A DNA stretch of 63,497 nt, the filler included, from Octopus bimaculoides (lineage: Eukaryota): assembly GCF_001194135.2 (NCBI RefSeq). It is 8 parts of 6 records of this genome, joined end to end, with 100 filler letters (N's around TTAATTAATTAA, not from the genome) between each part and the next. Parts side by side here need not be neighbours in the genome. Positions count along the whole stretch, not along the records: positions 17,214 to 20,140 come from NC_068983.1; 7 more parts are not named here. One strand, 5' to 3'. Positions 17,214 to 20,140 of this stretch are shown piece by piece (within the stretch, counting starts at the first letter, position 1; every line of letters begins with the position of its first letter). The notes under the pieces were generated by a model. It did not search any database. It worked only from the letters and a program-made list of their open reading frames with translations, and was not told the DNA's origin. The translations under genes were made by a program, and so were the position numbers.

Positions 17214-17370
17214 GTTGCTCGAAAGATATCATGTGTCGCCCGCACATGAGCCAGTCCAGGGGCACTGGCAACGATCCCGCTCGAAAGATTTCATGTGTCG
17301 CCCGCACATGAGCCAGTCCGGGGGCACTGGCAAACGATCCCGCTCGAAACATTTCATGTGTCACCCGCAC
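17214..17370 (-). repeat. 62-63 bp tandem repeat (about 2.5 units) homologous to RTE 3'UTR modules
   Basis: Unit gctcgaaagat(a/t)tcatgtgtcgcccgcacatgagccagtcc(a/g)ggggcactggcaacgatccc starts at 17217, 17279 and 17342; matches 20030-20085. Confidence 0.85.
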
Positions 17371-18521
17371 CCAATGAATAACCAATAAGCTGTTTTGACT
17401 TCTGAGGAAATTCTCAGAGCCATCATCAAACCAGAAATGTTCTTGCAATAAACCAAACCCAGTTGATTATGTGTGTCAAAAAGGTTAACAAATTTCTTCT
17501 CTCGGTGCCTGTACACTGTTGTTTTGATTCCTTGGGCTAAGACATCAAATTCTCTGGACAATGTTCCAGTCAGGTAAGTATCATCTTGGAAAGTCCGAAC
17601 TTTTGAACAAATGATCCACTTGTTCTGGACTTATTTTAGGGCATGAATGAGGACTTTCAAAATCCTTGTTATCCATTTGGTCTTCACATCCAGAATCATC
17701 ATCTGACTCATTCAATTGCTGAGTTTGGAACAAGAGGAATTTCATCTTCATATGGCTGTGGTCTTATGGCACAGGGCAAATTAGGATACTTGATATACTT
17801 TGCAGTTTTCTAATTGAATTACTCAACATTAGCAATACAAAAGTAGTGATCAGTAGAATGGTTGCTTTGTTCTTGTTATACCATTGGAATGGCAAATGGC
17901 ATTTGCTTCAGCCTGCCACAGGACTACAGAGAAAGCTGATCACTGCAACCTTTGCATACAATATATGGAGCAAAAGATTTATCATGGTCTTCAGGTTTCA
18001 TTTTGAAGTAATCCTTGTATCTTGCTTGTATGAGTGGTGTGAGGTTCCTCCAACAGTTTTCAAATGCATATTCTCCACAGATGTAGCAAAAGTGATCTGG
18101 GTCATTACAACCACACAAATTGAAGCAAATTGAAATGGAGAAATAAAAAACAGCAGTACACAGTGAACAGAGCAATTACTAATTTGATGCAACAAGTCAC
18201 AATAACATCCAAAACATGCATTTAAATCAAAGTGTTCTAAAAACAGACATGACCTAATATGCATTATATCTACTTTTACAGCTCTCTCATTAAAGGCTAC
18301 CACAAAAAGAACAATTCTTGAAAGACAAGTAGGAATATTTGATGTACTACATATGCTACATTACATTTCTGTAAATATAGAGGTATCTTGTAGATCAAAA
18401 TCTACATGTGATGGAGCATAACTAACTTCATATTCAGAAAGAGCACTCTAAAATTAGCTAAAAATCACTATCAACATCTATCTCTTGCTGAAGAAACAAT
18501 TTTTCATTCTATCATGCAGTG
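17371..18521 (-). mobile_element. Chapaev3-type (CMC superfamily) DNA transposon, 5' half, decayed
   Basis: Minus-strand remnants CNDPDHFCYICGE...DHDKSFAPYIVCKGC, PFAIPMV*QEQSNHSTDHYFC, YPNLPCAIRP and YRHREKKF..LVYCKNISGLM..YWLFIG (Chapa-like Cys/His finger, then the region before EWRLFID). Terminus CACTGCATG at 18521. Family name is from motif recognition. Confidence 0.75.
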
Positions 18522-18534
18522 AAACCTTCAAAGT

Positions 18535-18564
18535 TGTGCAGTCTAATGACTAAAACAAGTAAAA
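18535..18564 (+). mobile_element. Isolated SINE family A tail fragment
   Basis: gcagtctaatgactaaaacaagtaaaa matches the family A tail at 25/27 nt. Confidence 0.65.
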
Positions 18565-18626
18565 ATTAAAATTAAACAAAACATGAAATTAAAAAATGAA
18601 AACAAATAGTGGAAAAATGATTTATA

Positions 18627-18785
18627 TCATTTTTTGCTTTCAATCATTATAACATGGTAACCAAACTTAGTTTTCACAGGAGGATCTGTATAAACAGGAG
18701 AATTTACACAACTAGGTGTGAGAGCAAAAGCTGCCTCCTGGAATGGTCCAACCATGCTTCCACGAGTCATCCAACCAAGGTCACC
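18627..18785 (-). CDS. PIN4: PIN4 (parvulin-14 peptidyl-prolyl cis-trans isomerase), last coding exon
   Basis: Phase-0 acceptor tttttctgattccag|GGT. 159 nt translate to [52 protein letters not shown], matching the PIN4 C-terminus from an exon boundary that, as I recall, is also used in vertebrate PIN4. Upstream exons not found in readable sequence. Confidence 0.95.
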
Positions 18786-19211
18786 CTGGAATCAGAAAAA
18801 GAAGAAATCTATGAAACTCACAAAACATAAAATAATTGAATGGAGAGGGTGTTCAACTCAATCACCAAAACAAATTGTCCCTACTATAGAAATCAACCTT
18901 GTACTTTTTCAAAAGAATTTAATACTATTTCATATACCTATAAAAAATTCCATCAATTGCTCATTTTACAATAATAGTTTTATAGAAATTTCTGTTAACA
19001 GAAAAGTAGCTTTAGTAACTTCAGCAATGAAGAAATTAGCAGTGTAAGCATCATGAAGCAAACATAAATGAAGTAAAACAGATATTACCTGGAATTACAA
19101 TGATATTTCAGACACAGCTAAATAAAAGTGTACCTCCTACTTGACACAGCAGGCAAATAAAGCTGTACCAACAAAAAATATTTTATGCCACCAGAATTCA
19201 GGCTTGTCTCT

Positions 19212-19606
19212 TTTATCACTTTTACTTGTTTCAGTCATTTGACTGCGGCCATGCTGGAGCACTGCCTTTAGTCGAACAAATCGACCCCAGGACTTATTCT
19301 TTGTAAGCCTAGTACTTATTCTATCGGTCTCTTTTGCCAAAACGGTAAGTTACAGGGACGTAAACACACCAGCATCGGTTGTCAAGCGATGGTGGGGGGA
19401 CAAACACAGACACACAAACACACATACATATATGTATACATATATACAATGGGCTTCTTTCAGTTTCCGTCTACCAAATCCACTCACAAGGCTTTGGTTG
19501 GCCCAAGGCTATAGTAGAAGACACTTGCCCAAGGTGCCACGCAGTGGGACTGAACCCGGAATCATGTAGTTGGTAGCAAGCTACTTACCACACAGCCACT
19601 CCTATA
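19212..19606 (-). mobile_element. Full-length SINE family A in the PIN4 last intron
   Basis: Tail ttttacttgtttcagtcatttgactgcggccatgctggagc through head gctacttaccacacagccactcctata; several CpG transitions. Confidence 0.93.
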
Positions 19607-19780: not shown

Positions 19781-20140
19781 TCATTATCATCATCATCGTC
19801 GTTTGACGTCCGCTTCCATGCTAGCATGGGTTGGACGATTTGACTGTGGACTGGTGAAACCAGATAGCTACACTAGGCCCCAATCTGATTTGGCAGAGTT
19901 TCTACAGCTGGATGCCCTTCCTAACGCCAACCACTCCGAGAGTATCGTAGGTGCTTTTACGTGCCACCGGCATGAAGGCCAGTCAGGCGGTACTGGCAAC
20001 GGCCATGCTCAGAATGGTGTATTTTACGTGCCACCTGCACAGGAGCCAGTTCGGCGGCACTGGCAACGATCTCACTCGAATGTCTTTACACGTGCCATCT
20101 GGCACAAGTGCCAGGAAGGCGATGTTGGGCACAGGTGCCA
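19781..20140 (-). mobile_element. RTE-clade LINE 3'UTR with (GAT)n tail (cut by a gap)
   Basis: Reverse complement matches 62490-62916 (ggaagggcatccagctgtagaaac; gcatggaagcggacgtcaaacgacgatgatg). Confidence 0.85.

What the first reader, a model, noticed from the sequence alone, without database searches (positions are those of the whole stretch)
18636..18644. Candidate restorative A-to-I recoding in PIN4 (genomic Ser where Gly is conserved)
Seen: the C-terminus reads MIESKK*, with Ser encoded by AGC (minus-strand A at 18638, context AAG). Established: PIN4 orthologues typically end EG(R/K)K, coleoid cephalopods recode proteins extensively by A-to-I editing, and ADAR favours a 5' A/U and a 3' G. 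Inference: editing AGC to GGC would restore Gly; ATT to GTT at 18644 would likewise give the human-like Val. A housekeeping PPIase dependent on editing would be notable.
Basis: partly seen in the sequence, partly recalled or inferred. Interest (0 to 1): 0.7.

Follow-up and report, generated by a model that had tools for sequence, protein, structure and literature searches.

The report
Ordinary Gly-to-Ser change in octopus PIN4
The last exon of the annotated Octopus bimaculoides PIN4 gene really does encode Ser where almost all animals have Gly, but this looks like an ordinary lineage-specific DNA substitution in the protein's floppy C-terminal tail. RNA editing back to Gly is possible in principle, untested here, and unlikely on published base rates.

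Summary
Window 18785..18627 (minus strand) is the last coding exon of PIN4/Par14, ending ...[11 protein letters not shown]. Ser is AGC, with its A at 18638 in an A-A-G context.

The piece is 100% identical to O. bimaculoides chromosome CM046603.1, and the peptide matches XP_014788493.1. O. vulgaris, O. sinensis and Argonauta hians all carry GGC (Gly) in their genomes, so the A is a derived G>A change. Gly occupies this position in 302 of 314 PIN4 sequences; Ser, Ala, Asp, Glu or Tyr fill the rest.

The site therefore meets the published definition of a potential restorative editing site. Only 2.26% of such sites in this species are edited at all, usually at under 2.5%.

The residue is the first of a three-residue tail after the last beta-strand. 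A18638 sits in a weak AU-rich hairpin, which permits editing but does not predict it. No RNA data could be examined, and PIN4 is absent from every editome table I could reach, all of them truncated.

The Ile-to-Val idea at 18644 is weak: that A has a disfavoured 5' G, and Ile is the ancestral octopod state.

Most likely this is a plain missense substitution, of low interest.

The parts
18627..18785 (-). Last coding exon (exon 3, phase 0, stop codon included) of PIN4/Par14, encoding the C-terminal half of the parvulin PPIase domain
   Evidence: Translation. Pfam Rotamase_3 and Rotamase hits, E 2.4e-8 and 4.7e-8. 100% identical to O. bimaculoides XP_014788493.1. E 1e-47 to human Par14 structures 1EQ3 and 3UI4 when joined to exon 2.
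18636..18638 (-). Ser codon AGC. The A at 18638 is a derived G>A substitution (Gly>Ser), equivalent to human Par14 Gly129, the antepenultimate residue
   Evidence: GGC in O. vulgaris L001, O. sinensis L002 and Argonauta hians L005. Alignment to 1EQ3/3UI4. First residue after the last beta-strand in the AlphaFold model.
18642..18644 (-). The A at 18644 has a 5' G at 18645.
   Evidence: Ile in all octopod orthologues. Val 250 versus Ile 64 across orthologues.
18708..18710 (-). Cys codon TGT. This is the second derived non-synonymous change in O. bimaculoides (TCT Ser in the other octopods). It is a C>G transversion and cannot be explained by editing.
18786..18806 (-). 3' splice site and polypyrimidine tract of intron 2 (ttcttctttttctgattccag|GG)
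   Evidence: The exon 2/exon 3 junction ...ARNG|GDLGW agrees with the protein.
18597..18642 (-). Predicted AU-rich imperfect hairpin (10 bp, an 8-nt bulge, then 7 bp) spanning the end of the CDS and the start of the 3'UTR. A18638 pairs with U18601.
   Evidence: -12.1 kcal/mol, z -2.46, with 4 of 200 shuffles folding as well. Pairing probability 0.97-1.0 in windows up to 600 nt, 0.60 for a different partner in a 1-kb window. The same register gives a G.U pair in O. vulgaris and O. sinensis.
18538..18579 (-). SINE-5'-like fragment in the 3'UTR, inverted relative to the intronic SINE
   Evidence: Inverted repeat I1, 34 nt at 85%. blastn core of 43 nt at 81%. Present in all three Octopus species.
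19204..19602 (+). SINE inside intron 2. It is an insertion present in O. bimaculoides and absent at the orthologous position in O. vulgaris and O. sinensis. It can pair with the 3'UTR fragment in the pre-mRNA.
   Evidence: Alignment gap. RNAduplex -70.6 kcal/mol against -40.5 +/- 4.5 for shuffles.

Best explanation
Window 18627-18785 (minus strand) is the last coding exon of the already annotated Octopus bimaculoides PIN4 (Par14, parvulin-type peptidyl-prolyl isomerase) gene. The Ser is encoded in the genome. It arose by a G>A transition (GGC to AGC) on the O. bimaculoides lineage after its split from the O. vulgaris/O. sinensis lineage. It is one of two non-synonymous changes the exon acquired on that lineage.

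The residue is the third from the C-terminus, just past the last beta-strand, and small or acidic residues occur there in a few other taxa. The change is therefore most likely neutral or nearly neutral, and the protein is made and works as the Ser form. Editing at this A, if any, is expected to be absent or at the low 'noise' level typical of coleoid coding sites.

Shown: gene identity, the codon states in four octopods, the polarity of the change, and the position in the fold. Inferred: functional tolerance of Ser, and the absence of meaningful editing.
For: Identity. The piece is 100% identical to L003, which is CM046603.1 of GCA_001194135.2. The peptide equals XP_014788493.1 and the older v1 gene model P0241.

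Polarity. The genomic codon is GGC in O. vulgaris, O. sinensis and Argonauta hians against AGC in O. bimaculoides. A second derived change, TCT>TGT, cannot be explained by editing.

Divergence. Exons 2 and 3 show 6 synonymous and 2 non-synonymous differences between O. bimaculoides and O. vulgaris, which is ordinary purifying selection with occasional replacements.

Tolerance. The position is not invariant: 12 of 314 sequences lack Gly, including Ser in two other, unrelated sequences and Ala in four. The AlphaFold model places the last strand at residues 112-119 and Ser120 in a three-residue coil tail. It aligns to Gly129 of the 131-residue human Par14.

Base rate. In 'bimac' the fraction of potential restorative sites that are edited is 0.0226. 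The median restorative editing level is under 2.5%.

Literature. No PIN4 entry was found in any editome table that could be searched. No paper links PIN4 with A-to-I recoding.
Against: Gly is 96% conserved, so a replacement here is unusual. The change is specifically G>A, the A has the favoured 5' A and 3' G, and it is predicted to be base-paired in a hairpin next to an inverted SINE duplex. This is the pattern the harm-permitting model of editing predicts.

No RNA reads were examined, and the editome tables searched were truncated, so editing is not excluded.

Both O. bimaculoides gene models are built on the same genome project's sequence (GCA_001194135, v1 and its v2 rescaffolding), so as far as I know they are not independent evidence. 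Fixation of the A in the species is therefore not shown.
Confidence: 0.86

Rival explanations
1. Restorative (harm-permitting) A-to-I editing. ADAR deaminates A18638 in the mRNA or pre-mRNA, so a fraction of PIN4 protein carries the ancestral Gly. This either allowed the G>A mutation to fix or compensates for it. The substrate would be the local hairpin 18642..18597, possibly helped by the neighbouring duplex between the 3'UTR and the intronic SINE.
For: The site meets the formal definition of a potential restorative site. It has a 5' A and 3' G, the favoured neighbours. A18638 is predicted to pair with U18601 at P of about 0.97-1.0, and the hairpin has z -2.46. The hairpin is more stable in O. 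bimaculoides than in O. vulgaris, at -24.7 against -20.2 kcal/mol for 141 nt. An O. bimaculoides-specific inverted SINE gives a duplex of -70.6 kcal/mol whose 43-nt core lies about 60-100 nt away, with a weaker predicted extension reaching within about 10 nt of the hairpin's 3' end. Restorative sites are edited more often than synonymous ones, 0.0226 against 0.0141.
Against: The base rate is only 2.3% for any editing, with a median level under 2.5%. The hairpin is short, AU-rich and bulged, and 4 of 200 shuffles fold as well. An A-U pair is a less favoured ADAR target than an A-C mismatch (established ADAR biochemistry, not tested here). PIN4 is a ubiquitous gene while high editing is neural, so editing could not rescue it body-wide. 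PIN4 is not in the searchable parts of published site lists. SINE pairs of this kind are common in octopus introns, and O. vulgaris has its own copies in the same intron. My estimate is about 6% for any detectable editing and about 1-2% for levels that matter to the protein pool.
Confidence: 0.07
2. The A is not the species' fixed state. It is either a polymorphism (possibly slightly deleterious) carried by the single sequenced animal or a base error in the assembly, and most O. bimaculoides carry GGC.
For: All O. bimaculoides evidence (XP_014788493.1, the v1 model P0241, and the window) appears to come from the one genome project. The residue is otherwise 96% Gly.
Against: The v1 and v2 assemblies agree. 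A second derived non-synonymous change lies in the same exon, and non-coding divergence from O. vulgaris is about 9%, so fixed differences are expected to far outnumber polymorphisms. Nothing suggests low sequence quality here.
Confidence: 0.06

Closest known systems
Human Par14/PIN4 (parvulin 14; PDB 1EQ3, 1FJD, 3UI4-3UI6)
   Same: The PPIase domain is the same (E 1e-47 over 92 residues). Both have the GDLGW and FGYH active-site stretches and a C-terminus of the form ...IIM(V/I)E-x-(K/R)K.
   Different: The octopus protein has Ser where the human has Gly129, Ile where the human has Val127, and Cys/Asn/Ser in the variable loop.
O. vulgaris / O. sinensis PIN4 (CAI9720490.1, XP_029634141.1) and Argonauta hians PIN4 (GAB1609923.1)
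   Same: The three-exon structure and exon 2 peptide are identical in O. vulgaris and O. sinensis. In those two species exon 3 differs from O. bimaculoides at 3-4 of 159 nt. Argonauta hians (exon 3 only compared here) is more divergent at synonymous sites but shares the two ancestral codons, TCT and GGC.
   Different: They encode GGC Gly and TCT Ser where O. bimaculoides has AGC Ser and TGT Cys.
Restorative / harm-permitting A-to-I editing sites of coleoids (Jiang & Zhang 2019, PMC6881472)
   Same: A genomic A derived from G, where A>G recoding would recreate the ancestral amino acid, in a species with very active ADARs. 1,960 such edited sites are catalogued for 'bimac'.
   Different: Those are defined by observed RNA-DNA mismatches. 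No RNA evidence exists here, and only 2.26% of potential sites are actually edited.
[quoted passage not shown]
   Same: The same kind of codon change by editing, a Ser codon recoded to Gly.
   Different: That site is experimentally established and diversifying, since the ancestral Ser codons were uneditable. Here editing would be restorative and is unobserved.

Membership tests
PIN4/Par14 parvulin-type PPIase (orthologue) | PpiC/Rotamase domain | tested here: met
   Pfam PF13616 at 35 bits and PF00639 at 34.3 bits, both above their cut-offs, on the 52-aa exon peptide alone.
PIN4/Par14 parvulin-type PPIase (orthologue) | Closest solved relatives are Par14 rather than Pin1 or bacterial PrsA/SurA | tested here: met
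   1EQ3, 3UI4 and 1FJD at E about 1e-47. The next best hit is an archaeal/bacterial parvulin at 2e-17, and Pin1 scores about 1e-9.
PIN4/Par14 parvulin-type PPIase (orthologue) | Single-copy orthologous locus with conserved exon structure in sister species | tested here: met
   Flanks are collinear with O. vulgaris and O. sinensis at about 90-92% identity, with the same exon 2 and exon 3 boundaries.
PIN4/Par14 parvulin-type PPIase (orthologue) | Intact reading frame, splice site and stop codon (that is, not a pseudogene) | tested here: met
   Open frame, a cag|GG acceptor, TGA at the orthologous position, and 6 synonymous against 2 non-synonymous differences. Exon 1 was not seen within L003.
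Restorative A-to-I recoding site (Jiang & Zhang 2019) | Genomic A whose change to G is non-synonymous and recreates an ancestral amino acid | tested here: met
   AGC against GGC in three other octopods, with Gly in other molluscs.
Restorative A-to-I recoding site (Jiang & Zhang 2019) | A/G mismatch between RNA and DNA of the same animal | not testable with these tools
   No read data were available. No transcript-derived O. bimaculoides PIN4 is in the protein collections. Published tables were truncated or not held.
ADAR substrate | Favourable nearest neighbours (5' U/A and not G; 3' G) | tested here: met
   A18638 has a 5' A and 3' G. A18644 has a 5' G, so it does not meet this feature.
ADAR substrate | Target A embedded in double-stranded RNA | tested here: inconclusive
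   The evidence is prediction only: a 17-bp bulged AU-rich hairpin with z -2.46, and a stronger inverted-SINE duplex nearby that does not include the site. Three closely related species give no covariation power.

The most novel reading that the evidence does not exclude
A18638 is edited to a substantial level in O. bimaculoides, restoring Gly129-equivalent. The substrate was created or strengthened on the same lineage, by the A-U pair and the perfect inner stem of the hairpin together with the O. bimaculoides-specific inverted SINE insertion in intron 2. That would make it a datable, mechanistically traceable example of harm-permitting editing in a housekeeping gene.
Probability: 0.02. Interest if true: 0.5.

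Novelty: already known. Interest (0 to 1): 0.15.

Why it matters
If the site were highly edited, it would be a neat single-gene illustration of the harm-permitting model: editing lets a damaging G>A mutation fix in a conserved housekeeping enzyme. Sister-species genomes would give the ancestral state, and a lineage-specific SINE would be a candidate cause.

As things stand it is one of many thousands of 'potential restorative sites' in this genome. About 98% of those are not edited. The gene and its Ser are already in the public annotation, so it adds little.

Tried and rejected
1. Exact-sequence look-up of the 47-aa ORF MTRGSM...IESKK in the assembly collection found nothing. No RNA-derived copy could be found.

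2. I looked for edited (Gly) transcript-derived O. bimaculoides proteins through two further homologue searches and a cluster listing. Only genome-derived models exist. The 184-aa v1 model P0241 also reads SKK.

3. Editome literature:
- Liscovitch-Brauer 2017 (PMC5499236) and Birk 2023 (PMC10445230) are not held.
- Jiang & Zhang 2019, Shoshan 2021, Zhang 2023 and the 2019 bioRxiv preprint have no PIN4, Rotamase or NIMA-interacting entry in their stored supplements. The large site tables (Jiang & Zhang source data, Zhang 2023 recoding table) were cut when stored, so this is only weak negative evidence.
- PMC10826634 has no held supplements.
- No paper combines PIN4 with A-to-I recoding.

4. The squid editome paper gave no usable description of the neighbour motif. 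I used PMC9989829 instead.

5. The Argonauta 3'UTR does not align, so I could not determine which hairpin-strengthening changes are derived.

6. Rfam and ARAGORN found nothing real in the piece.

7. I considered and rejected the idea that the exon is a pseudogene or paralogue. The locus is collinear with sister species and under purifying selection.

8. I rejected the Ile>Val suggestion because of the 5' G and because Ile is ancestral in octopods.

Full report
**What is at the coordinates**

Read on the minus strand, window 18785..18627 translates without interruption to [52 protein letters not shown]. It is preceded by a good 3' splice site...ttcttctttttctgattccag|GGTGAC. The Ser codon is AGC at 18638-18636. 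The peptide hits the Pfam Rotamase families above their cut-offs.

**Where it comes from**

- A search with the exon joined to a generic N-terminal part returned O. bimaculoides PIN4 (XP_014788493.1, P0121). Its C-terminal half is identical to the window's peptide.
- Fetching the encoding contig showed that the whole 2,927-base piece is 100% identical to L003:32990-35916. That is chromosome CM046603.1 of assembly GCA_001194135.2.
- The site corresponds to CM046603.1:91,720,876. The feature is therefore the last of three coding exons of an already annotated gene.
- An older v1 gene model (P0241) reads the same SKK tail. It appears to rest on the same genome project's sequence, so it is not independent evidence.

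**Is Gly really the rule, and which state is ancestral?**

- Across the 314 PIN4 sequences gathered in three searches, the position is Gly in 302, Ser in 4, Ala in 4, Asp in 2, Glu in 1 and Tyr in 1. Two of the four Ser sequences are the O. bimaculoides models.
- The genomic loci of O. vulgaris (L001), O. sinensis (L002) and Argonauta hians (L005) all read GAA GGC AAA AAA stop, against GAA AGC AAA AAA TGA in O. bimaculoides. The A is therefore a derived G>A transition on the O. bimaculoides lineage.
- The same exon carries a second derived replacement, TCT Ser to TGT Cys at 18709. This is a transversion that editing cannot explain. There is also one synonymous difference.
- Exon 2 has five synonymous differences and no replacements. 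Six synonymous and two non-synonymous differences over 93 codons is the normal signature of a constrained gene with occasional replacements.

**Structural context**

The octopus domain aligns end to end with human Par14 structures (1EQ3, 3UI4; E about 1e-47). Ser falls on Gly129 of the 131-residue human protein. An AlphaFold model built on a 38-sequence alignment was of moderate quality, with mean pLDDT 67 and about 70-85 in the domain. It ends the last beta-strand at residue 119 (…GYHVIMIE). Ser120, Lys121 and Lys122 form a coil tail of lower confidence. Ser and Ala also recur at this position in other taxa. A Gly-to-Ser change here is therefore plausibly tolerated, although the 96% conservation shows the position is not free.

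**The editing hypothesis**

[quoted passage not shown] Their source data give the base rates:
- In 'bimac', 2.26% of potential restorative sites are edited at all, against 1.41% of synonymous sites and 0.97% of diversifying sites.
- The median restorative editing level is below 2.5% in every coleoid.
- In squid, only 13% of restorative sites exceed 20% editing.

Features that raise the odds:
- The favoured 5' A and 3' G neighbours.
- A predicted local hairpin, 18642..18597, of 10 + 7 bp with an 8-nt bulge, at -12.1 kcal/mol and z -2.46. In it A18638 pairs with U18601 at probability 0.97-1.0 in windows up to 600 nt.
- In O. vulgaris and O. sinensis the same register gives a G.U pair and a weaker inner stem.

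Features that lower the odds:
- The hairpin is short and AU-rich, and 4 of 200 shuffles fold as well.
- In a 1-kb window a different partner is preferred.
- An A-U pair is not ADAR's preferred target (established ADAR biochemistry, not tested here).
- PIN4 is a ubiquitous gene, whereas the exceptional editing activity is neural. 'Dependence' of the enzyme on editing is therefore hard to picture.

My estimate, by inference from these numbers, is about 6-7% for any detectable editing and 1-2% for a level that would matter.

**Attempts to find direct evidence**

- No transcript-derived O. bimaculoides PIN4 exists in the protein and contig collections.
- The two key editome papers are not held.
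- PIN4, 'NIMA-interacting 4' and 'Rotamase' do not occur in the stored parts of the supplements of Jiang & Zhang 2019, Shoshan 2021, Zhang 2023 or the 2019 preprint. The large site tables among these were truncated on storage, so this is only weakly negative.
- No paper in the library connects PIN4 with A-to-I recoding.

**The second suggestion: ATT to GTT at 18644**

Ile is present in all four octopod proteins and in 64 of 314 orthologues. It is therefore the ancestral octopod state and a common variant, not a lesion needing repair. That A also has the disfavoured 5' G. I regard this part as unsupported.

**Surroundings**

- Intron 2 contains a SINE of about 399 nt (19204-19602). It is absent from the orthologous position in O. 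vulgaris and O. sinensis.
- The SINE is inverted relative to a SINE-5'-like fragment in the 3'UTR (18538-18579) that all three species share.
- The two can form an extended imperfect duplex in the pre-mRNA, at -70.6 kcal/mol against -40.5 +/- 4.5 for shuffles. Its weakly paired 3'UTR end lies about 10 nt past the site-bearing hairpin, and its well-matched 43-nt core lies about 60-100 nt from A18638. In an 891-nt fold, 25 of the 34 core pairs form and the local hairpin persists.
- This is a credible ADAR substrate for non-coding hyper-editing, and it feeds the most novel reading. However, such SINE pairs are common, and O. vulgaris has its own copies in the same orientation 1.15 kb upstream. 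The coincidence carries little weight.

**Verdict**

The evolutionary premise, a derived A where Gly is ancestral and strongly conserved, is confirmed and sharpened. The claim that editing restores Gly cannot be tested here and is improbable on published base rates.

The best-supported explanation is an ordinary, genomically encoded, lineage-specific Gly>Ser substitution in the C-terminal tail of an annotated housekeeping gene. Novelty: already known. Interest is low, at 0.15. A roughly 2% chance remains of a moderately interesting, datable case of harm-permitting editing. A few minutes of read mapping at CM046603.1:91,720,876 would settle it.

Noticed in passing
window 19204-19602 (with 18538-18579): A SINE of about 399 nt in PIN4 intron 2 is present in O. 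bimaculoides but absent at the orthologous spot in O. vulgaris and O. sinensis. It is inverted relative to a SINE-5'-like fragment in the 3'UTR. The two bracket the last exon and are predicted to form a duplex of -70.6 kcal/mol (shuffles -40.5 +/- 4.5). This is a likely target for non-coding hyper-editing.
   Followed up: partly
window 17380-18175, minus strand: A decayed coding remnant that looks transposon-derived, spread over three frames with stop codons. It starts with a Cys-rich module (CYICG...KSFAPYIVCKGC) and continues ...PMVWQEQSNHSTDHYFC...YPNLPCAIRPQP...LVYCKNISGLMMAL. It has no Pfam family. The 83-aa ORF has 448 relatives at E<=1e-3 among the 50%-identity representatives, mostly short unnamed proteins. 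It lies just downstream of PIN4 on the same strand.
   Followed up: partly
window 17217-17370 and 19955-20068: A 62-nt unit repeated 2.5 times in tandem at 94% identity (GCTCGAAAGATTTCATGTGTCGCCCGCACATGAGCCAGTCCAGGGGCACTGGCAAACGATCCC). Diverged copies of the same unit sit in direct orientation at the other end of the piece, probably as part of another interspersed repeat.
   Followed up: no
L003:6001-6388 (O. bimaculoides locus, outside the window): The NCBI model XP_014788493.1 starts with an aberrant N-terminus (MALNAALPGAIW...LSFQ) read from intron sequence just upstream of exon 2. O. vulgaris instead has a K/G-rich exon 1 about 10.8 kb upstream. The true O. bimaculoides exon 1 was not within the 6 kb fetched, so the public model is probably mis-annotated at its 5' end.
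   Followed up: partly
window 17214-18626, minus strand: No canonical AATAAA or ATTAAA poly(A) signal occurs on the gene's strand anywhere in the 1.4 kb downstream of the stop codon. The 3'UTR either uses a non-canonical signal or extends beyond the piece, which would take it through the transposon remnant.
   Followed up: no
window 18709 (codon 18710-18708): A second O. bimaculoides-specific replacement in the same exon: Ser (TCT) to Cys (TGT) in the variable loop of the PPIase domain. It introduces a new cysteine into a small redox-exposed enzyme.
   Followed up: partly
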